Positions 641 through 11,069 of a stretch of 11,795 nt of DNA are shown one piece after another (the stretch's first letter is position 1; every line of letters begins with the position of its first letter). The position numbers and the translations under genes were made by a program. The stretch lies in assembly GCA_000388065.2 (NCBI GenBank), contig KB932218.1, one strand, 5' to 3'. The notes under the pieces are model-generated. The model saw only the letters and a program-made list of their open reading frames with translations. It was not told the DNA's origin and did no database searches. The DNA is from Fonticula alba ATCC 38817 (Eukaryota > Protista > Nucleariida).

Positions 641-3600
641 TCAGTTGGCCGGGCTCAGGGGGGACAGCCGCTGCTGGGCGCTGGCCATGGTCGGGCGCTC
701 GGCAGGGTCGTGGTCCCAGCAGGCGGCCGCCACGTCGAGGAGTGTGCGCACGGCCGGCGAGGTGGCCGGCAGGCGGATGGCCTCGGCCGAGGTGTCCGGC
801 CGGTCGCCGGCCACCACGCGCTCGATCAGCTCGAGGGTGGCGAGGCCTGCGGGCAGCCGGGCGGACGAGGGGGCGGCGGTGGTCAGCGGGCGTGAGCCCC
901 GGGCAAGGGGGGGGGGCGGGAGGGCGAGGTCGAGCAGGGAATGAATGGGACGCGTCGGGGCGCACCGGACCAGGGCCGGGTCTTGGACACCAGCTGCCAG
1001 AGGACCACGCCGAAGGAGTATGTGTCGCAGGCGAAGAGGTCGCCCCCGGACATGGCCTTGGTGGAGATGTTGGTTTCGCGGAGGTTTTGGCTTGCGCGGT
1101 AGATGGCATTGTCGCGGAGGAACTAGCCGGCCGTTGGGGGCGGGGGGGGNNNNNNNNNNNNNNNNNNNNNNNNNNNNNNNNNNNNNNNNNNNNNNNNNNN
1201 NNNNNNNNNNNNNNNNNNNNNNNNNNNNNNNNNNNNNNNNNNNNNNNNNNNNNNNNNNNNNNNNNNNNNNNNNNNNNNNNNNNNNNNNNNNNNNNNNNNN
1301 NNNNNNNNNNNNNNNNNNNNNNNNNNNNNNNNNNNNNNNNNNNNNNNNNNNNNNNNNNNNNNNNNNNNNGGGGGGGGGCGACGGGGCGGTCAGTACGAGG
1401 CGATCGGGCGGTCAGTACGAGGCGATCGGGCGGTCAGTACGAGGCGATCGGCCGGGCAGTGCCGGACGGCCGGTGGCAGGGAGCGGCTGGCGCACCTCGG
1501 GCGCGGTGTAGGGCGGGCTGCAGCCGCGGACATTGAGCGAGGACACCAGCAGCGACCCGCGCTCGACGCTGCGGGCGATGCCAAAGTCCCCGATGGCCGC
1601 GCGCAGGAGCCCGCTGCCGGCGGGGTCCGGCGCCAGGAACACATTGGCCGGCTTGATGTCCAGATGGACGATGCCGGAGCCGTGGATGAACTCCAGCCCG
1701 GTGGCTGGGCCGCCGGCGGGGCGATTGCCATTCGGGGCGCCGAAGCGTGTCAGGGGCCGGGCATCAGCGAGCCAAATGGGGCCGGCGGGCGGGGAGGGAC
1801 GCACCGATGTCGCACGCCAGGCGCATGGCCTGCGCCTCGGAGGGATCGTCCTCCGACAGGTGGAGGACCCGGTCGAGGCTGGTGCTGTACAGCCGCATGA
1901 CGATGGCCAGCGGGGCCACCGAGTAGCCCAGCAGGGTGGCCACATGCGGCGACATGGCCAGGGTCCACATGAGGGACACCTCGTTCTCCATGACCGACAT
2001 GGCCTGCTGCGGGTTGGAGCCTGTGGGATGGGCGGGGGGGGGGGGGGGTCCCATCGCGCGTTGGCCGCCAGGCGGCGAGTGCGCACACACGCCACGCGTA
2101 CGCGCGCACACAGATATACCCGCATGCACACATATGCACACATGTACACATGCACACAGATATACACGCATGCACACAGATATACACGCATACACACAGA
2201 TATACACGCATACACACAGATATACACGCATACACACAGATATACACGCATACACACAGATATACACGCATACACGCATACACACACATGTACACACATA
2301 CACACAAATATACACACACACATACACACACATACACACACATACACACACATACACACACATACACACACATGCACACACCCAGGCACATCAGGGGCAG
2401 GCGGCCGGAGCCGACACATGGCAGGCGAGAGGTCAGTCAGGGACGGCGGATGGGTTCGCGCGGGCGGCCGCACCAGGGCCGGGCCACGTACCGGTCACCA
2501 ATTTGACGGCCACAAGGTCCTGGTTGCTGGCGCGCTGCATGAGCTCCGGGGAGAAGATCCGGGCCTCGACCACGGCCGCCTGGGCGCCCTTGCCGAGCTC
2601 CGACTCGTCGTGGAGGAACTGCACATCGCGCTTGAGGTCCAGCAGGAGGAAGCCCGGCAGGGCGATGTCGAAGATGGTGTTCATGACGGTGCGATTGGCG
2701 TCGTCCAGCTCCAGGGCCTCGGTCTCGGCGTCGTGGGGCTTCTTGTGGCGCAGGAGCCGCGGCCGGCCGGCCACCAGCAGCCCGACGATGACCAGCGACA
2801 GGACCACCAGGAACAGGAGCCCCAGGCCGATGGACAGGCCGAGGACCATGCGCAGGGGGGTGCCCTGGTGGCAGTCGGGGCATGCTCGCTCGAGGCAATC
2901 GTCGGCCGCCGGGCCGAGGCACACCAGGCAGCCCTCCTCGCAGGCGGTGCACACCAGGGCCGAGCTGTCGGCGTGGTCCTCGAAGAATGCCGGCGGGCAG
3001 GTGGCCAGGCATTGGCCCGGGGCCGAGGGCCAGGGCCGGTGCAGGACCCCCGGCACCCGGCACCGCAGGCAGTCATCCGGCCGGTCGGTGCACTCGATGC
3101 AGCCCTCCGGGCAGGGGACACACCGGCGCCCGGGGACATCCTTCCAGAACCCCTCGCTCGGGCAGTCATACTGGCAGCCGGTCCCGGCCAGGAGGAAGTA
3201 CGGCTCATGGCAGGCGGTGCACCCGGCGGGCCCGGGCCCGGAGCAGGTGGCACAGTCGGTGGCACAGGCGCGGCAGGTGGCCCCATCGCCGGCATCCAGC
3301 CAGAAGCCCTCCGGGCAGGCTTCCAGGCAGTGGCCCCCATGCCGGGCCAGGCCCGGCCGGCAGGCGGTGCACTTGTCCTCGCCGGGCTCGGCGCATGTGG
3401 CACAGGTGCCGTGGCAGGCCCGGCACCGGCCGGCCTGCGGGTCGGCCCAGTGCGCATACTCGCCGGGGGGGCAGGCCTCGACGCAGCGGCCCGATGCCTC
3501 GGACAGGAGCGGCCCCTCGGGGCCGGCCCCGAGGCAGGCCGTGCAAAAGTCCCCGGCCCCGGTGCACCGGGCACAGGCCCCGGTGCAGGGGCGGCACACC

Positions 3601-5510
3601 CGGTCGCCGGCATGGCCGAAGTACCCGGCCGGGCAGGTCTCCGCACAGGCCGGCCCCTCCGAGGCCCCGGTGTCCGGCAGCATGAAGGACCCCTCGCGGC
3701 AGAGGATACACTCGCCGGGCTGCTGGCTGCCCTTGTCATCGGCCTCGCAGCGCTCGCACCGGTTGGGGCACACTTGGCAGGCGCCGGTGTCCTCGGAGGG
3801 GGTCAGCCCCGGGGGGCAGTCGGCCCGGCAGGTGGTCCCGAGCTCCGGCTTGTCGGCCGGCGGCTGGAGGAAGTCCCCGGCCGGGCAGGCCGTGCAATTG
3901 CTGCTCTCGGGCCCGGTGCAGGTGGCACAGGTCCCATGGCACGGGGTGCACAGCTGGGCATCGGCATAGTAGCCATCCGGGCAGGCGGCCAGGCAGCGCC
4001 GGCCGCCGGGCAGCCGCGGCGCCGGCAGGGTGAAGCTGGCCCGGGGGCAGGACTTGCACCCGTCCTCCAGGGCATCGTAGCACTGGCCGCAGGAGAGGTG
4101 GCACCGCTCGCAGGTGCCCGGCGTCGGGGCAAACCAGCCGATGGGCGAGCACTCGGCCCGGCACTCGCCCCCCTGGAGGACCATGTCCGGCGGGCAGTCG
4201 CTGCATTGGTCATGCCCGGGCCCGGTGCACCGGTCGCCGCAGCGGGTGCTGCAGGCCGCGCAGTAGCCGGCCTCCATGGTGGCATGCCTCGGGGGGCAGG
4301 CCTCCAGGCAGAGGCCATCCAGCAGCACCAGCGGCGCATGGCACTCCATGCACACGGAGTCCCGGGTGTCCGGCAGCGGGGCATGGGGGTCGCGCAGCCG
4401 GCAGCTGGCACAGCCCTCCTGGCAGACGGCACACTGGGAGGGGACATTCATGCAGTCCTGCACGCAGGGCCCCCGGGCGAGGGGCGGATCGACCGGCGGG
4501 ATGGGCTGGCGAATGACCAGCGGGTGGTCGCACTCGGTGCAGGCGCTGCCGGCCGGCCCGTCGCATGTCCGGCAGTCCGGGTGGCAGGCCCGGCAGGCCC
4601 CGCCGTAGGGGCCGTCCGTGGGGGTCCGCTCGCCGAAGAAGCGCTCCGGGCAGTCCCGGTGGCAGGCGCCGGCCAGGAAAAAGTGGTCCGCCTGGCAGCG
4701 CTCGCACTGGTCATACCGCGGGCAGTGGGCGCAGCCGGCCTCCATGCAGGGGATGCACTTTTCCTCGGCCGACAGGCCGAAGCCATCCAGGCACACCGCG
4801 CACCGGGTGCTATTGATGATGGCCATGTCGCAGTGCTCCACCCCGTGCGACTGGGTGCAGCGGATCGTCCCGTCGGTCGGGTCCAGCACGCGGAACTTGA
4901 AGAGCATCTCGCACTGGTAGACGCACTTGCCGCGCGACAGGAACAGCCCCGCCGGGCAGAGGGTGCATACGTGCGGCCTGTCGCACTCCAGGCAGAGGGG
5001 GTCATCGCAGGCTGCCGGGGCGGAGGACTGGCTGCCGGGGCTGCTGGCACTGGTTGAGGTGCTGTCGGATGCGCTGGCGGAGGTACTCGTGGAGGCGCTG
5101 GCGGAAGTACTCGTGGAGGCGCTGGCGGAGGCGCTGGCAGAGGCGCTCGTTGATGCGCTGGCAGAGGTGCTCGTGGAGGCGCTGGCGGAGGTGCTCGTGG
5201 AGGCGCTGGCGGAGGCGCTCGTGGAGGCGCTGGCGGAGGCGCTCGTGGAGGCGCTGGCGGAGGTGCTCGTGGAGGCGCTGGCGGAGGTGCTCGTCGATGC
5301 GCTGGAGGAGGTGCTCGTCGACGCACTTGCCAATGCGCCGGCTGGTGCCCCGACGCTGACGCTGGCCAGGCCGGCCGAAGGAGAGAAAGGCGAAGAGGAC
5401 GGAGCTCGCAGGGCTAGCATGCCGGCATAGGCCAGCGCCGCCGTCGCCGCCAGCAGCAGTGACACAAGCAAGGTCACCAGCGGCGCCGAGGCCGCGCCGC
5501 GCCGGGACAT
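641..5510 (-). CDS. Single-pass receptor-like Ser/Thr kinase (TKL-like) with Ser/Thr/Ala repeat and furin-like Cys-rich ectodomain, about 1268 aa, 5 exons
   Basis: Exons: 5510-2492, 2020-1805, 1704-1496, 1122-966, 846-641 (3807 nt). All four introns are GT..AG with matching phases (1,1,0,1). Spliced kinase motifs: GKGAQAAV, VAVK, MENEV (alphaC Glu), HLDIKPAN, DFG, YTAPE, DTYSFGVVLW, CWDHDPAERP; stop TGA at 643-641. The ATG at 5510 precedes a hydrophobic stretch; the upstream part of ORF 2433..5783 is low-complexity and probably non-coding. Confidence 0.92.
1150..1369. other. Assembly gap (220 N), intronic
   Basis: N run flanked by G homopolymers, within intron 1123-1495. The flanking exons join in frame as APE|FLRD. 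Confidence 0.95.
1385..1451. repeat. 3 x 22-bp perfect tandem repeat in intron 3 of the receptor kinase
   Basis: cggtcagtacgaggcgatcgg recurs at 1387, 1409 and 1431. Confidence 0.95.
2101..2381. repeat. Intronic CA/TA-rich minisatellite: 6 x 20-bp unit plus 5-6 x 10-bp unit
   Basis: t(a/g)cacacagatatacacgca x6 at 2151-2270 and catacacaca x5 at 2321-2370, plus catgcacaca. Lies inside intron 2021-2491 of the receptor kinase. Confidence 0.95.
2769..2846 (-). other. Transmembrane helix
   Basis: VLGLSIGLGLLFLVVLSLVIVGLLVA followed by basic GRPRLLRHKK (positive-inside rule). Confidence 0.9.
2870..5010 (-). other. Furin-like cysteine-rich repeat array (about 13-14 units), extracellular
   Basis: Repeated CxxChxxCxxCxGpxxxxCxxC...C...CPxG(Y/F) units, e.g. 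TPCHGTCATCTGPESSNCTACPAGDFL and RACATDCATCSGPGPAGCTACHEPYFL. Boundaries are approximate. Confidence 0.88.
5071..5322 (-). repeat. Coding 24-bp tandem repeat (10 full units plus one 12-bp half unit) encoding (S-T-S-T/A-S-A-S-A)n
   Basis: Plus-strand unit gcgctggcggaggtgctcgtggag and variants start at 5071, 5095, 5131, 5155, 5179, 5203, 5227, 5251, 5275 and 5299. A 12-bp half unit starts at 5119. All units are in frame. Confidence 0.95.
5424..5510 (-). other. Predicted signal peptide of the receptor kinase
   Basis: MSRRGAASAPLVTLLVSLLLAATAALAYA: basic N-region, Leu-rich core, A-x-A ending. The cleavage site is not determined. Confidence 0.75.
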
Positions 5511-6678
5511 CGTGCGCAGGGGATGGCGCCCGGATTGGGGACAGGGCGAGCCAGCGGGGAGAGGGGGTGTGGGGAAGTGCGGGAAGGCGTGCGAGTCGGG
5601 TGGTGACGAGAGGGGGGGGGGGACACAAGCATGCGGATGCCGAAGCGCCCCCCCAGGGCCCGGGGGGGGGGAGGCGCCAGATGGGCCACCAATCAAGGCC
5701 CCCAGCCGCGATCTCGGGCCTGTTACTGGCGGCCCCCCCCCCCCCGGCCCCCCACCCCGCCCCCCCCCCCTCCGCGCCCCCACCGAGAGTGTCTGCCTCG
5801 TGCCGGCGGGACAGCTTGCAGCAGAGCTGTGTCAGTCCGGACTCGGGGACCCCGGTTCCCCCCCCCCCCCCCCCCCCGCCCCCCCTCGAGGACGGCCGCC
5901 GGGGCCGGGGCAGCGGGGATCTCACTGCATCGGCCGCCGGCCGGGCGCCCGAACCCCCGGCAGTGTGCCGCCGGCGTCCGGCCGCATCCGGGCGGGGGTC
6001 AAATCAATATCGGCGTGCCTTTTGAACCCGGCCGGGCCCCAGGAATGGGTGCGGCAAATGCGCCGGGGAGGGGCCCAGAGACGCTGGCCCATGAGATAGC
6101 GCACCTTCGTAGAGATAGTGGTCCGCACACGCCGGCTCCCCGGCCCGAGGTGGTGGGTGGTGGGGGGGGATTTGTGGGTTTTGGGGGCCGGCCCCGGCAA
6201 GCGCGCCAAGACCCACCGCGGCGGCATAGGCGTTGCGCCGCCCTGCGCGCGCCGGGCGCGCTGCTCGCCCGCCCCAGGGGGGGGGGGGGGGGGCGAGAGC
6301 CGCGCGATCGACGCAGGCCAAACCGCCTGCAGGTCTTGCCGCTGTTCCTGATCTAGTGGCCGGCCGGGCGGCGGCCGATGGGTGTGGCCCTGCCCGGGCG
6401 ATGTCTCATGGGGAGGGGGCATGGCGCCTGCGTGAGAACCTGCCCGTCGCTTGGGCGCGCGCGCGCGGGGGCCCGGACGCACCGCGGCCCAGCCGGCCCA
6501 GCAGGCCCTCGGCTAGCGGGCGCGCATACTCCCCCCCCCCCCCAGCCTGGCGCCCTGTGCGGCCCGGGCCCGGATGCAAGGGCCCGCGCGCGCACCTCCG
6601 CCGAGCTGCCCGGGTAGAGATGATCAGCCGCATGCCTTCCAGCCAGAGCGGGCAGCAGGGGGGGGGCCTGTGTGGCCG

Positions 6679-7760: not shown

Positions 7761-10413
7761 ATGGCCACGCGCAGGTGGCGCACCAAAAGCGACCACGCGC
7801 AGGAGCACGTCCCCGAGGACCGGAATGTCGTGGGCGAGGTTGTCGGCCCCTATGTATGTGCTTGACCTTTGGGTGTGCCCTTTTGCCGGAGACCATCTGC
7901 GCTGGATGCTGACGCCGCCCTTTGCCCCGGGGGTTTTCTTTTTACAGATTGTCGGTGACGAGCTTGGCCGCGGGTCATCTGGCTATGTGAAGCGCGCCAT
8001 CAACTCCGAAAACGGTGCGCATGTCCGGTTCCCGTGGCTTGCGACCTGGCGCGCGAGTGCATGCATGCGCCTTTCCACTCACCTGTCCGACTGCGTGCTG
8101 CTCCTGTAGGGCACTTCGTGGCCATCAAGCAGTTTCCCAGGTCGATCTTCTCGCCGGAGCAGGTGCGTCCCGTGAAGCGCTTTGCTTTTGATCGTGTGTT
8201 TGTTCTTTTGCGCGTGTGTGCGCGTGTGTGCGCGTGTGTGGCTCCATGTGCCTGCATGTGGCTCCATGTGCCTCCATCTACGCACATGTGTATGCATGCG
8301 CCTGCATGTACACGCGTGTGCCTCCATGCGCCTCTGATGTAGCATAGCTGACCCTGGGCTTTGCCACCGCGCAGTTTCGCGTCCTCGAGGCGGAGATCGA
8401 TTCGCTCCAGCGCCTGGCGCACCATCAGAACATCGTCCGCGTGCTGGATGTCATCCGCGGCCCGGCCTACTTGAACTTGGTCCTGGAGTGTGCGCCGCCC
8501 CAGCCGCCCTTCCGGGCCCCGACGCGCTGTCGCGCCATGCTGGCCTTCCCCTTGCCCTGTGCCCCCACCCCCTTCCCATGCCCTGCCACGCCATGCTAAC
8601 AGGCCCCGGCGCGCAGATGTCGAGAGCGGCTCGGCCGCCCAGATCATCGAGAACTTCGGCTTCTTCCCGGAGCCCCTGGCCGCATTGTACATCTCCCAAT
8701 CGCTGAAGGTGCGCCCGGTGGCGACATGGCCCGCGAGCGCCTCTGCCTGGTGCCTTTCTTTTCCTCCTCACGCACGCCCCCCCNNNNNNNNNNNNNNNNN
8801 NNNNNNNNNNNNNNNNNNNNNNNNNNNNNNNNNNNNNNNNNNNNNNNNNNNNNNNNNNNNNNNNNNNNNNNNNNNNNNNNNNNNNNNNNNNNNNNNNNNN
8901 NNNNNNNNNNNNNNNNNNNNNNNNNNNNNNNNNNNNNNNNNNNNNNNNNNNNNNNNNNNNNNNNNNNNNNNNNNNNNNNNNNNNNNNNNNNNNNNNNNNN
9001 NNNNNNNNNNNNNNNNNNNNNNNNNNNNNNNNNNNNNNNNNNNNNNNNNNNNNNNCCGCTCGGCCGCGTCTGCCCGGTGACTGACCCGTCCTTTCCGGCC
9101 CCCCGCTCGCCGGATGCGTTCGCGCTTGCTGGCGCCAGATTTCGGCCTGACCAAGGCCGCCGAGCTGAATGTCCCATACTGGTGTACGTTTATCGTCCTC
9201 CCTCCGCTCTTCTCCCCGCCCACCCGTCTTTAGTCCGCCTGCGCTCCTGGACACACGGCCGCAGCCGGTCCTGCGCTCCTGCCTCCGCCCGTGCTGACAC
9301 TTTGCTCCGGCCCCTGCCCTGCCATGTGGGCGGCACAGCCTCGCCAGAGCTCCTCGACGGCGCGGCCCCCGGCAAGCCGGCCGACATTTGGGCGCTGGCG
9401 TGCACGGCCATGGAGTTCACCACCGGGGCACCGCCGTGGGCCGAGCTGCAGCCGGCCACAGCGGCCGCGCGCCTGGCCACCAGCCTGCCGACGCCGCCGG
9501 GGCACGCGTCGGCCGAGCTGGTGGCCTTCCTGGCCCGGTGCTTTGTGCACGACCCGGCTGGCCGGTGTACGGTGGATGCGCTGCTCGAGGACGAGTGGGT
9601 CAGCGCCGTGTCGCCGGTCATCGTGGAAGAGGCGGCCGCAGGGGCGGCGCTCCCCCGGCAGCCGGCAGCCCGGCCGTCCAAGTCGGACGGGCCGCCCTCG
9701 GTGGTCACCTCCGCCGGGCTGGTCCCCTCGGGCGGGGTATGTTTCTTCTTGCCTCCTTCCTCCTCCCCTTTTTTTTTTCGGCCGGTCGCCCGGTTCTGAC
9801 CCCCTCCTTCTCGGGCATGGCGTCCTTGGCGCCTGGCGATGGGGCTGGGGCACTTTTGCTGCTCGGTGTCCAGGGCCCGGCCGGCCCGGTGTCCGGGGGC
9901 GCCCCGGTCGAGCGCATGATGATCCGAGTGGTCATGCAGCTGGGCGAGGGCGAGTCCGCCAAGACCATCTACGTCCAGCGGCAAATCACCGCGCGTGCCC
10001 TGGTGTCGGTCATCCTGAACAAGGTGCGCTCAGTGGCGCCGGGCGCTGCTTTGCCTTCTTGCCGCTTCCGGCCCCGGCCCCCGCTCTCGGTGGGGCTCCT
10101 TGCTGCTGACCCCTGCCCCCCGCTCCTCCTCTCCCTCCTCCTCCTCCCTGCCGCCGCATGTGGTGTGCTTGGCCCTCGCCGCGCCGGCCGACGCGGCCTG
10201 TTCGACTCGCGCCCCATCCCGCCCTCGGCCTGGGTCGGTGGCGAGGCCCGCAGCTGAGCGCCTACTACAACCCCGAGGACTACTGCATCGCCGAGTACCA
10301 CACCACCAAGGGTACGCCCCGGCCCTCGGCCTGTCCCGTCCGCTGGCCGGGAGTCTCTGCTCACCTACGCGCCCCTGTGCTCCCAATCTCTCTCTATCTC
10401 TCTCCCATGCCCC

Positions 10414-10452
<39 letters not shown>

Positions 10453-11069
10453 GAGAAGCAGATCTTCCTCGACCACGAATACCCGGCACAATACTACGAC
10501 TCGGACCAGACGCTCGACTTCCAGCTGCGCATCGAGCCGCGCCCGGCCGACATGATCTGCGGGACCCTGCGCCGGCGGCGGGGCCGGCTCATGTCGCGCC
10601 ACTGGCAGACGCAGTACTGCGTGCTGGACACGCACGAGCGATACCTTGCTTTCTATCAGCGCGCCCCTCGCCCGGGGGAGGAGGCCCTCGAGCCGGCCAC
10701 CGACGTCATCTGGGACCTGACGCACATTGACTCGGTGGTGATCAGCTCGCGCGACGCGACCCGGTGCGCATCCCGCGGCCGGCTGCCGCACTCCCCCCCC
10801 CCCCTCCCTCCTCTCCTCGCTGCCTTCCAATGCCGCGGGCGCCCGACTGACCTGCCGCCTGCCTCTCCCCTCCGCCCGCGCCCCTGCCCTCTGTCCTGCC
10901 TGCTGGTCTATCCCCCGGCCCCCGGGCCAGCTTCGCCATCGAGTGCGCCGGGCAGGTGCACCACATGGCAGCCAACTCCATAGACGACGCCCTGCGCTGG
11001 ACCAATGCCCTGCGCCACGCCAGCGGGTGCCCCTTCCAGCTGGGCTTCCGCAAGGACTTCGGCAACTAG
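7761..11069 (+). CDS. STE-group (STE11/Cdc15-like) Ser/Thr kinase with C-terminal RA and PH domains; one exon missing in assembly gap
   Basis: Exons: 7761-7853, 7948-8014, 8110-8162, 8375-8489, 8617-8708, [gap exon], 9139-9183, 9339-9736, 9874-10023, 10254-10311, 10454-10763, 10931-11069 (TAG). All visible introns are GT..AG with consistent phases. Motifs: YIVGDELGRGSSGYV, FVAIKQF, EAEI, HQNIV, LVLEYVESGS, ENFGFFPEPLAALYISQ, DFG, PYWSSPE, ADIWALAC, PPW, RCFVHDPAGR. 1520 nt are visible. The subfamily call rests on motif resemblance from memory. Confidence 0.88.
8210..8332. repeat. Intronic GT/GC-rich low-complexity repeat
   Basis: gcgcgtgtgt units, then recurring gctccatgtgcct / gcctgcatgt variants, inside intron 8163-8374. 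Confidence 0.8.
8784..9055. other. Assembly gap (272 N) predicted to hide the catalytic-loop exon of the STE kinase
   Basis: The exon before ends in phase 0 (SQSLK|) and the exon after begins AT-TTC-GGC (phase 1, completing DFG). Kinase subdomains VIa-VIb are absent from the visible sequence. Confidence 0.9.
9919..10530 (+). other. Ras-association (RA, ubiquitin-like) domain, spread over three exons
   Basis: Spliced MIRVVMQLGEGESAKTIYVQRQITARALVSVILNKLSAYYNPEDYCIAEYHTTKEKQIFLDHEYPAQYYDSDQTLDFQLR fits the RA pattern by eye (KTI-x-V...TA..V...L.K...P.DY.I.E...E.P...F.LR). Confidence 0.78.
10417..10449. repeat. (CA)16 microsatellite immediately before a 3' splice site
   Basis: cacaca...c is followed directly by gcag|AG AAG CAG (acceptor at 10453). 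Confidence 0.95.
10552..11021 (+). other. Pleckstrin homology (PH) domain
   Basis: ICGTLRRRRGRLMSRHWQTQYCVL...YLAFY...DVIWDLTHIDSVVI...RFAIE..VHHMAANSIDDALRWTNALRHA: G-x-L-basic strand 1, W..Y.VL strand 2, and a terminal helix with the conserved Trp. Confidence 0.85.

What the first reader, a model, noticed from the sequence alone, without database searches (positions are those of the whole stretch)
7761..11069. Kinase-RA-PH fusion: a STE kinase carrying the RA-PH tandem usually seen in kinase-less animal adaptors
Seen: the spliced model gives an N-terminal STE11/Cdc15-like kinase, a short Ala/Pro-rich linker, then an RA domain abutting a PH domain, in roughly 540 aa. Established: adjacent RA-PH modules define the Grb7/10/14 and MRL (RIAM/lamellipodin/MIG-10) adaptors, where they integrate Ras/Rap-GTP and membrane lipid. 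Fungal Ste11/Byr2 carry their Ras-binding region N-terminal to a C-terminal kinase. Inference: this may be a one-polypeptide Ras-plus-lipid coincidence-detecting kinase with an architecture I do not recognise as a named family. It could inform the origin of RA-PH modules outside animals. Basic residues expected for Ras contact are present (MIR, AKT, QR/AR, LNK).
Basis: partly seen in the sequence, partly recalled or inferred. Interest (0 to 1): 0.75.

Follow-up and report, generated by a model that had tools for sequence, protein, structure and literature searches.

The report
Cdc15-like kinase with RA-PH tail
This Fonticula alba gene really does encode a STE11/Cdc15-type protein kinase followed by a Ras-association domain and a PH domain; it belongs to a small, undescribed family, but it is built from well-known parts and the idea is not new.

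Summary
The window is Fonticula alba contig C18. Twelve GT-AG exons (7761-11069) encode a kinase, a 60-aa linker, an RA domain and a PH domain. One exon lies in the assembly gap.

The gap was tested first. Exons on both sides map collinearly onto one homologous kinase. About 32 residues are missing, including the HRD catalytic loop. The splice phases require a hidden exon of 3n+1 bases.

On the spliced public product, Pfam calls RA at 36.9 bits (cut-off 21) and PH at 26.2 bits (cut-off 25.1).

The public model H696_06098 is broken. It starts just after the gap, and it bridges a second 2.8-kb gap into an unrelated Tau95/Mog1 gene.

It is supported by homology instead:
- A 699-aa protein from an unidentified eukaryote is one uninterrupted ORF in two datasets. 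It aligns in a single segment across kinase, RA and PH (E 6e-32).
- F. alba has a second kinase-RA-(PH-like) paralogue, annotated STE/STE11/CDC15.

An AlphaFold model of the homologue's tail (pLDDT 80) ranks Grb14, lamellipodin, Grb10, RIAM and SIN1 tandems first. The RA-PH linker is only about 6 residues, and the relative orientation of the domains does not match those structures.

Ras-plus-lipid-sensing kinases already exist (Raf, Dictyostelium Phg2). This is a new variant of a known kind.

The parts
7761..7853 (+). Exon 1: start codon and N-terminal lead-in to the kinase (31 codons, ends in phase 0)
   Evidence: ATG at 7761 with a GTATGT donor at 7854. The last 15 residues map to P0004 120-134, just before its kinase domain.
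7948..8014 (+). Exon 2: kinase glycine-rich loop (GRGSSG)
   Evidence: Maps to P0004 135-156 with 11/22 identical, and to P0003 145-166.
8110..8162 (+). Exon 3: strand 3 with the VAIK lysine
   Evidence: Translation. Maps to P0004 159-164.
8375..8489 (+). Exon 4: helix C (conserved Glu) to strand 5
   Evidence: Pfam Pkinase profile 46-78. Maps to P0004 175-211. Aligns with kinases in the PDB.
8617..8708 (+). Exon 5: hinge, helix D and the start of helix E; ends in phase 0
   Evidence: Maps to P0004 214-241 with 13/28 identical. Aligns to NIK 133-160.
8784..9055 (.). Assembly gap hiding about one exon (expected about 97 nt, 3n+1) that would carry the end of helix E, the HRD catalytic loop and strands 7-8
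   Evidence: The missing stretch corresponds to P0004 242-273. The splice phases on the two sides are 0 and 1. The paralogue P0003 carries HRDIKGANIL at this position.
9139..9183 (+). Exon 7: DFG motif and a short activation segment
   Evidence: CAG acceptor at 9136-9138 and GTACGT donor at 9184. The public model P0001 uses the same donor. DFG aligns to P0004 residue 274.
9339..9736 (+). Exon 8: kinase C-lobe (to about 9604), then the Ala/Pro-rich linker (9605-9736)
   Evidence: Pfam Pkinase 38.7 bits, profile 165-263. Best PDB matches are MAP3K2 and ASK1. Linker GC3 is 41/44.
9737..9873 (+). Intron 8, between the kinase-linker exon and the RA exon (137 nt, GTATGT...CAG)
   Evidence: T-rich with low GC3 (0.51-0.69). 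Reading through it reaches a stop after 20 codons. Its size is within this gene's range of 94-230 nt.
9874..10023 (+). Exon 9: end of the linker, then RA strands 1-2 and helix 1 (RA starts at 9913)
   Evidence: Pfam RA profile 3-39 on this exon alone. RA scores 36.9 bits on the spliced product. The 13 codons before the first Met have GC3 of 13/13.
10254..10311 (+). Exon 10: middle of the RA domain
   Evidence: Junctions as in P0001. There is no indel at either junction in the alignment to P0004.
10454..10763 (+). Exon 11: last RA strand (to about 10539), a linker of about 6 residues, then PH strands 1-6 with a very basic strand 1-2 loop
   Evidence: Maps to P0004 513-597 with 34/80 identical. 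PH scores 26.2 bits on the spliced product. This is the only copy of this exon in the genome.
10931..11069 (+). Exon 12: last PH strand, C-terminal PH helix (conserved Trp), a short tail and the TAG stop
   Evidence: Pfam PH profile 74-104. The public model leaves this exon at 11027/11028 only to bridge a 2.8-kb N gap.

Best explanation
One Fonticula alba gene encodes a protein of about 540 aa. It has an N-terminal STE11/Cdc15-type Ser/Thr kinase domain, a low-complexity linker of about 60 aa, a Ras-association (ubiquitin-fold) domain, and directly after it a PH domain. It is the shorter and more divergent of two F. alba paralogues. Both belong to a small family that also has a 699-aa member in an unidentified eukaryote.

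Inferred mechanism: the C-terminal RA-PH pair acts as a membrane-targeting and regulatory module. RA binds a GTP-loaded Ras- or Rap-like GTPase. The PH domain, through its highly basic strand 1-2 loop, binds acidic membrane lipid. Together they bring the kinase to sites of GTPase activation, or release it there, in the way Raf, Phg2 or the RIAM RA-PH unit are recruited.

Shown: exon structure, domain content and order, homology across all three domains, and the PH fold of the family representative. Inferred: catalytic competence (the HRD loop lies in the gap), Ras or Rap binding, lipid binding, and the substrates.
For: Gene structure:
- All borders are canonical GT-AG. Exon GC3 is 0.91 against 0.42-0.85 in the introns.

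Domains:
- Pkinase on single exons. On the spliced public product, RA scores 36.9 bits and PH 26.2 bits, both above Pfam's cut-offs.
- The kinase C-lobe is closest to MAP3K2, ASK1, MST and PAK.

One polypeptide:
- BLASTP of P0001:1-366 against P0004 gives a single collinear segment, 9-359 against 274-640, E 6e-32, running through C-lobe, linker, RA and PH.
- P0004 is one complete ORF on a 2160-nt contig. The same ORF is uninterrupted on a 2967-nt contig from an independent dataset.
- P0004 carries Pkinase 245.8 bits, RA 41.5 bits and PH 20.5 bits; the PH score is below Pfam's 25.1-bit cut-off.
- The window's exons on both sides of the gap map on P0004 in order.
- The linker is about 60 aa here and 57 aa in P0004.

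Paralogue:
- P0003, named 'STE/STE11/CDC15 protein kinase [Fonticula alba]', has Pkinase at 147-413 and RA at 584-656.
- The RA-PH part of P0004 finds exactly these two loci in the genome.

Fold:
- The AF2 model of P0004:440-655 has pLDDT 80.4, with a beta-beta-alpha-beta-beta-alpha-beta unit followed by a 7-strand-plus-helix unit.
- The PH part gives Z 15.1, rmsd 2.5 A over 100 residues, against the DAPP1 PH domain.
- The Foldseek top hits spanning both domains are Grb14 RA-PH/H-Ras, lamellipodin, Grb10, RIAM and SIN1 RBD-PH/KRAS.

Partner:
- The genome has at least 33 exon-level matches to the Ras family of small GTPases.
Against: - The E8-E9 splice therefore rests on sequence signals, the public model and homology.
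- The public model that uses this junction is itself a demonstrable chimera at its 3' end, so its authority is weak.
- The catalytic loop is unseen.
- The kinase is very divergent, with 34-35% identity to Cdc15 kinases and a very long branch. Its activation segment is unusually short.
- The PH domain lacks the basic residues in strand 2 that are typical of phosphoinositide-specific PH domains. I read this from the sequence; it is an inference.
- The window protein's own RA-PH model was poor (pLDDT 40). The fold evidence comes from the homologue, at 27-31% identity.
- The two-domain superposition on the Grb and MRL structures is poor (TM 0.33-0.37, rmsd about 16 A).
Confidence: 0.6

Rival explanations
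1. There are two adjacent genes: a kinase gene ending by read-through into 9737-9799, and a separate RA-PH adaptor of about 205 aa starting at the ATG at 9913. The reader and the public annotation merged them wrongly.
For: - The RA profile match starts exactly at the first Met of exon 9.
- Read-through of the donor reaches a stop after 20 codons.
- The public annotation over-merges at its 3' end.
- No RNA data are available.
Against: - Homologues in two other loci or organisms carry kinase and RA(-PH) in one ORF, with a linker of about the same length.
- 9737-9873 has a strong GTATGT donor, a CAG acceptor and intron-like composition. The 13 codons before the Met are exon-like, with GC3 13/13.
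- Only 113 nt would be left for a 3' UTR, a promoter and a 5' UTR, in a genome where neighbouring genes in this window lie about 2 kb apart.
Confidence: 0.07
2. The gene is one unit, but the window copy is a decaying or non-catalytic paralogue. It would be a pseudokinase scaffold whose RA-PH tail still localises it, with no phosphotransfer.
For: - It sits on a very long branch, with 34-35% identity to Cdc15-type kinases, against 59-68% for the paralogue P0003.
- The activation segment is short and lacks the usual GT before PYW.
- The HRD loop is unseen because of the gap.
Against: - The glycine loop, VAIK, the helix C Glu, DFG and S-P-E are all present.
- No frame disruption or in-frame stop occurs in any of the eleven visible exons.
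- GC3 is uniformly high.
Confidence: 0.12
3. The architecture is real, but the RA and PH folds do not read Ras-GTP and lipid. The ubiquitin-fold plus PH pair would serve as a protein-protein or autoinhibitory module, binding another GTPase class, the kinase's own lobes or a substrate. Many RA-like and PH domains work this way.
For: - The PH strand 2 lacks the canonical basic pair (read from the sequence; an inference).
- RA matches are moderate (33-41 bits), and sub-threshold matches to several RA-like families are spread evenly.
- FERM-type proteins, which also contain a ubiquitin-like lobe and a PH-like lobe, also appear among the fold matches.
Against: - A Lys in RA strand 2 is invariant in all three family members, as is a basic residue closing helix 1.
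- The strand 1-2 loop of the PH domain is strongly basic in both the window protein and P0004.
- The highest-ranked two-domain structures are all Ras- or Rap-binding tandems.
Confidence: 0.2

Closest known systems
Fonticula alba 'STE/STE11/CDC15 protein kinase' (P0003, 1088 aa, contig C1) and the 699-aa protein P0004 from an unidentified eukaryote (Logan SRR29605746; JGI 3300050371)
   Same: Same order: Cdc15-type kinase, linker, RA, PH(-like). Homology is collinear over all three domains with P0004. Intron positions are shared with P0003: after the LV[IL]E motif of strand 5 and just before DFG.
   Different: The window protein is shorter and much more divergent in the kinase. P0003 has long Gly/Pro-rich inserts, and Pfam does not call its PH domain. 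None of the three has been studied.
Canonical Cdc15 / SepH / Sid1-type kinases (mitotic exit / septation network)
   Same: This is the nearest kinase subfamily. P0003's kinase is 44-54% identical to fungal and nucleariid Cdc15/SepH.
   Different: Canonical members carry an ARM-type tail (PF24768), not RA-PH. F. alba appears to have a separate, closer Cdc15-like locus on C3. The RA-PH kinases are therefore extra paralogues, and a mitotic-exit role cannot be assumed.
MRL (RIAM, lamellipodin, MIG-10) and Grb7/10/14 RA-PH adaptors
   Same: RA is followed by PH. These are the top-ranked solved structures for the family's RA-PH model and the nearest language-model clusters (0.87, a lead only). In RIAM the pair detects Rap1-GTP plus PI(4,5)P2 (PMC3471229).
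   Different: - They have no kinase.
- Their RA and PH are about 50 residues apart and form one rigid unit (PMC3471229). Here the linker is about 6 residues, and the modelled geometry does not superpose (TM 0.33-0.37).
- Sequence similarity is not significant (E 0.6).
- There are no proline-rich, SH2 or BPS parts.
Dictyostelium Phg2
   Same: A Ser/Thr kinase that combines a lipid-binding domain and a Rap1-GTP-binding RA domain in one polypeptide. The RA domain is needed for its function (PMC2064086).
   Different: The order is reversed (PI(4,5)P2-binding domain, RA, kinase). The lipid module is not a PH domain. From my own knowledge, the kinase belongs to a different group (TKL-like).
Raf kinases (RBD-CRD-kinase) and SIN1 of TORC2 (CRIM-RBD-PH)
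   Same: In both, a ubiquitin-fold Ras binder sits next to a membrane-lipid binder and controls a kinase. SIN1 RBD-PH with KRAS (7lc1) is among the best fold matches.
   Different: Raf places the sensors N-terminal and uses a C1 domain (established knowledge). SIN1 is a subunit that regulates a separate kinase.

Membership tests
Eukaryotic protein kinase, STE group, STE11/CDC15-like | Pkinase profile match above threshold | tested here: met
   E8 alone scores 38.7 bits against a cut-off of 31.7. E4 gives a partial match.
Eukaryotic protein kinase, STE group, STE11/CDC15-like | Catalytic motifs: glycine loop, VAIK Lys, helix C Glu, HRD...N, DFG, APE | tested here: inconclusive
   All are present except HRD...N, which falls in the assembly gap 8784-9055.
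Eukaryotic protein kinase, STE group, STE11/CDC15-like | Closest relatives are STE11/CDC15 kinases | tested here: met
   - The best PDB matches are MAP3K2 and ASK1, then MST and PAK.
- The nearest rows in the tree are P0003 (named STE/STE11/CDC15) and P0004, though on a very long branch.
Canonical Cdc15/SepH (mitotic exit network kinase) | C-terminal ARM-type tail (PF24768) | tested here: not met
   The tail is RA-PH. No PF24768 match was found on P0001.
Ras-association domain (PF00788) | Profile match above Pfam's cut-off | tested here: met
   36.9 bits against a cut-off of 21 on P0001:160-375. 41.5 bits in the homologue P0004.
Ras-association domain (PF00788) | Ubiquitin-like beta-beta-alpha-beta-beta-alpha-beta fold | tested here: met
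   Met for the homologue: the AF2 model has this order of elements at pLDDT 73-92, and two-domain Foldseek hits go to RA-PH structures. The window protein's own model was poor.
Ras-association domain (PF00788) | GTP-dependent binding of a Ras-family GTPase | not testable with these tools
   Only an invariant strand 2 Lys is seen.
PH domain (PF00169) | Profile match and seven-strand sandwich capped by a C-terminal helix with a conserved Trp | tested here: met
   - 26.2 bits against a cut-off of 25.1.
- The homologue's model gives Z 15.1, rmsd 2.5 A over 100 residues, against the DAPP1 PH domain.
- The Trp is invariant.
PH domain (PF00169) | Phosphoinositide-binding basic motif in strands 1-2 | tested here: inconclusive
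   The strand 1-2 loop is very basic, but the usual strand 2 basic residues are replaced. I read this from the sequences.
MRL / Grb7-10-14 RA-PH ('GM') module | RA then PH in one chain | tested here: met
MRL / Grb7-10-14 RA-PH ('GM') module | Linker of about 50 residues and a conserved RA-PH interface giving one rigid unit (PMC3471229) | tested here: not met
   - The linker is about 6 residues.
- The two-domain superposition gives TM 0.33-0.37 and rmsd about 16 A. The model's interdomain geometry is itself uncertain (pTM 0.54).
MRL / Grb7-10-14 RA-PH ('GM') module | Significant sequence similarity to family members, and the accompanying proline-rich, SH2 or BPS parts | tested here: not met
   - Lamellipodin RA scores E 0.6.
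- RA_2 is sub-threshold (14.8-25.6 bits against a cut-off of 27).
- No other domains were called.
Phg2-like Rap1 effector kinase (Dictyostelium) | N-terminal PI(4,5)P2-binding domain, then RA, then kinase | tested here: not met
   The order here is kinase, RA, PH. The architecture of Phg2 is taken from PMC2064086.

The most novel reading that the evidence does not exclude
The RA-PH pair of these Cdc15-like kinases is homologous, as a unit, to the RA-PH module of the animal Grb7/10/14 and MRL adaptors. If so, the module predates animals, was present in the opisthokont ancestor attached to a kinase, and the animal adaptors are kinase-less derivatives. The family would then be a living example of a direct Ras/Rap-to-MAP3K-type membrane switch that animals lost.
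Probability: 0.12. Interest if true: 0.65.

Novelty: new variant of a known kind. Interest (0 to 1): 0.4.

Why it matters
If the mechanism holds, Fonticula alba wires a Ras-family GTPase directly to a Cdc15/STE11-type kinase through a C-terminal RA-PH sensor. F. alba is an aggregative amoeba on the fungal side of the opisthokonts. I did not find this arrangement described in the papers I searched.

It adds a data point on how Ras-effector modules were shuffled before animals and fungi diverged. Earlier notes of this scan report RA domains on a formin and on a GIT-like ArfGAP in the same genome.

Practically, it shows that the public gene model H696_06098 is wrong at both ends because of assembly gaps. 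Its kinase N-lobe is missing, and an unrelated Tau95/Mog1 gene is fused on. Domain-architecture surveys built on that model would misread the protein.

Tried and rejected
- **Exhaustive phmmer** of exon 11 against 1.84 billion representatives found only the gene's own public product and one 2xPH protein.
- **Word-indexed search** scored on the RA-PH region of P0001 found nothing. The same search on the paralogue's RA-PH found only the paralogue itself.
- **Collection scans.** Two metagenome scans (alignment A2, and P0004:430-660) and one viral scan found nothing.
- **Sequence search of the PDB** with RA-PH was not significant.
- **AF2 of the window protein's RA-PH without an alignment** gave pLDDT 40 and was unusable. 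I modelled the homologue with a 5-row alignment instead.
- **ESM Atlas search of residues 1-375** found no large cluster with Pkinase+RA+PH.
- **Tree of kinase C-lobes.** The window row has an extreme branch, so its place next to P0003 and P0004 is only consistent with kinship and is not proof.
- **The 31-aa Fusarium 'member' of P0004's cluster** lies among ordinary fungal genes. I discarded it as a clustering artefact.
- **Rejected: the public model's 3' continuation.** It needs a 3.6-kb intron across a 2.8-kb N gap, and it enters a Tau95 domain that lacks its first 35-43 profile positions.
- Exons were searched singly by reference, and the stored public product P0001 stood in for E7-E12.


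Full report
**Where the window lies.** The window is Fonticula alba contig C18:98727-110521, in a 31.3-Mb assembly of 214 contigs. The public protein that contains exon 11 is XP_009498135.1 / H696_06098. The sequence has about 70% G+C. It holds two runs of N, at 1150-1369 and 8784-9055. The window ends at the edge of a third gap of 2.8 kb.

**The gene model.**
- E1 7761-7853
- E2 7948-8014
- E3 8110-8162
- E4 8375-8489
- E5 8617-8708
- gap 8784-9055
- E7 9139-9183
- E8 9339-9736
- E9 9874-10023
- E10 10254-10311
- E11 10454-10763
- E12 10931-11069

Donors are GTATGT, GTGCG[CT] or GTACG[CT], and acceptors are [ACT]AG. Complete introns are 94-230 nt long. Exon GC3 is 0.91 against 0.42-0.85 in the introns. 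The introns are pyrimidine-rich on the sense strand.

Exons were searched one by one by reference. For E7-E12 I used the stored public product P0001, which uses the same junctions.

**The assembly gap, tested first.**
- E5 ends in phase 0 on a GTGCGC donor. E7 begins with the last two bases of the Asp codon of DFG, so the hidden coding sequence must be 3n+1 bases long.
- Mapped exon by exon on the homologue P0004, the pieces are strictly collinear: E2 to 135-156, E3 to 159-164, E4 to 175-211 and E5 to 214-241. DFG falls at residue 274, and E8 maps to 300-387.
- The missing stretch corresponds to P0004 242-273. That is 32 residues holding the end of helix E, the HRD catalytic loop and strands 7-8.
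- One exon of about 97 nt, with the two partial introns that are visible (75 and 83 nt), fits a gap estimated at 272 nt.
- So the two flanks belong to one kinase domain and are compatible in frame. The catalytic loop itself has not been read.

**Domains.**
- On single exons, Pfam gives Pkinase on E4 and on E8 (38.7 bits, above the cut-off). It gives a sub-threshold RA match on E9 (profile 3-39) and a sub-threshold PH match on E12 (profile 74-104).
- On the spliced public product, RA scores 36.9 bits (cut-off 21) at residues 171-245. PH scores 26.2 bits (cut-off 25.1) at 260-359.
- The RA match, extrapolated to the full profile, ends where the PH match starts. The AF2 model of the homologue puts six residues between the last RA strand and the first PH strand.
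- The kinase C-lobe is closest to MAP3K2 and ASK1, then to MST and PAK, among solved structures.
- The glycine loop, VAIK, the helix C Glu, DFG and S-P-E are all present. The activation segment is about 10 residues shorter than in P0004.

**The public model is broken at both ends.** P0001 (940 aa) starts at an ATG at 9114, just after the gap, so it lacks the whole N-lobe. It leaves E12 at 11027/11028 and resumes at 14620, three bases after a 2,821-N gap. From there it runs through a Tau95 (TFIIIC subunit 5) barrel that lacks its first 35-43 profile positions, and then through a Mog1 domain. An intron of 3.6 kb is out of scale with the gene's other introns (94-230 nt), and it exists only to bridge the gap.

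Three lines support one gene.
1. *Intron 8 looks like an intron.* 9737-9873 has a strong donor and acceptor and intron-like composition. The 44 linker codons before it and the 13 codons after it (upstream of the first Met of the RA exon) are exon-like, with GC3 of 41/44 and 13/13. Read-through would add 20 low-GC3 codons and then a stop.
2. *A second F. alba locus has the same order.* The locus on contig C1 encodes a complete Cdc15-type kinase, a linker, an RA domain (35.9 bits) and a PH-like region with long Gly-rich inserts. Its public product P0003 is named STE/STE11/CDC15 protein kinase. It shares two intron positions with the window gene: after strand 5 and just before DFG.
3. *The best non-self relative of P0003 has all three domains in one ORF.* P0004 is 699 aa, from a eukaryote with about 40% G+C. 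It has Pkinase at 137-388, RA at 445-512 (41.5 bits) and PH at 537-641 (20.5 bits, E 7e-4, below Pfam's cut-off). It is a complete ORF on a 2160-nt Logan contig. The same ORF, 99.95% identical and uninterrupted, lies on a 2967-nt JGI contig.

BLASTP of P0001:1-366 against P0004 gives one collinear segment covering C-lobe, linker, RA and PH (E 6e-32, 27% identity). There are no indels at the E9/E10 or E10/E11 junctions. The RA-PH part of P0004 finds exactly two places in the F. alba genome: the C1 paralogue and this window.

**Fold.**
- The window protein's RA-PH folded poorly without an alignment (pLDDT 40).
- With a five-row alignment, P0004:440-655 gave pLDDT 80.4. The model shows a ubiquitin-like unit followed by a canonical PH sandwich and helix.
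- The PH part matches the DAPP1 PH domain at Z 15.1, rmsd 2.5 A over 100 residues.
- Foldseek ranks first the two-domain structures Grb14 RA-PH/H-Ras, lamellipodin, Grb10, RIAM RA-PH and SIN1 RBD-PH/KRAS, each aligned over about 245 columns. Global TM is only 0.33-0.41 and rmsd 13-16 A.
- So the order of folds is shared, but the modelled relative orientation is not. The model's own interdomain confidence is modest (pTM 0.54).

**Comparison with what is known.**
- *Animal RA-PH adaptors.* In RIAM, RA and PH are about 50 residues apart, form one rigid unit, and act as a detector of Rap1-GTP plus PI(4,5)P2 (PMC3471229). Here the linker is about six residues, and sequence similarity to MRL and Grb proteins is not significant. 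I therefore do not file this as an MRL/Grb member.
- *Kinases with Ras and lipid sensors.* The concept is established. Dictyostelium Phg2 has a PI(4,5)P2-binding domain, a Rap1-binding RA domain and a kinase (PMC2064086). Raf has RBD-CRD-kinase (established knowledge). SIN1 places an RBD next to a PH domain in TORC2 (7lc1).
- *Canonical Cdc15/SepH.* These kinases, including that of the nucleariid Parvularia (Nk52), carry an ARM-type tail instead. F. alba seems to have a closer Cdc15-like locus on C3. The RA-PH kinases are therefore extra paralogues.
- *Tree.* In a C-lobe tree the three RA-bearing kinases fall on one side, but the window row has an extreme branch, so this is only consistent with kinship.
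- *Literature.* I found no paper describing the architecture.

**Mechanism (inferred).** The kinase is probably recruited to, or released at, membranes where a Ras- or Rap-like GTPase is active. This would happen through the RA domain, which has an invariant strand 2 Lys in all three members. It would be helped by electrostatic binding of the PH domain's very basic strand 1-2 loop to acidic lipid. The strand 2 basic pair typical of phosphoinositide-specific PH domains is absent, so I expect low lipid specificity. The genome encodes many Ras-superfamily GTPases. The substrates are unknown.

**Verdict.** This is an undescribed but modest variant: a small Cdc15-like kinase family with a C-terminal RA-PH tail, assembled from well-known modules. 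The window copy is its most divergent member, and its catalytic loop is still hidden in an assembly gap.

Noticed in passing
window 11028 to beyond the window end; L007 (C18:109500-119400), exons at extended coordinates 14620-16978: The public model H696_06098 fuses the kinase-RA-PH gene, across a 2,821-N gap, to a Tau95 (TFIIIC subunit 5) barrel that lacks its N-terminus, and then to a Mog1 (Ran-interacting) domain. Whether Tau95 and Mog1 are themselves one gene or a second false merge was not examined.
   Followed up: partly
window 1412-5783, minus strand (gap at 1150-1369): The divergently oriented neighbour is a receptor-type kinase. It has a signal-like N-terminus, a long Ser/Thr/Ala repeat, about 700 aa of furin-like Cys-rich repeats (Furin-like_2, GF_recep_IV), a transmembrane stretch and a kinase domain that continues in 1415-2473. 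An intron in between is full of CA/TG-type repeats. Earlier notes of the scan report giant receptor kinases nearby.
   Followed up: partly
L008 (C1:3893500-3903400); public protein P0003: Second F. alba kinase-RA-(PH-like) gene, annotated STE/STE11/CDC15. Its PH-like region carries a Gly-rich insert of about 90 aa and a long strand 1-2 insert, and Pfam does not call it. The locus has two assembly gaps of its own (4439-4498 and 7846-8076).
   Followed up: partly
L004-L006 (C2:2900343-2905455) and L003 (C6:1781998-1785318): Further RA-domain matches in the genome: three in a row within 2.2 kb on C2, and one on C6. They are probably the multi-RA effector genes (formin, GIT-like ArfGAP) noted by other readers. 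I did not identify them.
   Followed up: no
L009:1-38 versus L012:796-833: The two contigs that carry P0004 are 99.95% identical, except that the first 38 nt of the Logan contig (with the start codon) are replaced by other sequence in the JGI contig. There a PIG-L gene lies head-to-head only about 50-80 nt away. This could be a 5' exon, a spliced leader or an assembly chimera. The organism is unidentified (about 40% G+C).
   Followed up: partly
window 8195-8335 and 10418-10450: Introns 3 and 10 contain microsatellite-like repeats: GTGTGCGC and CATGTGCCT-type units in intron 3, and a (CA)n run of about 32 nt just before the acceptor of exon 11.
   Followed up: no
G000:C3:1937330-1940574, minus strand: These are the two best matches to a nucleariid Cdc15 kinase domain (63-66% identity). 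They lie 3 kb apart, in an order that does not fit one minus-strand gene. There may be two tandem Cdc15-like genes or an assembly problem.
   Followed up: no
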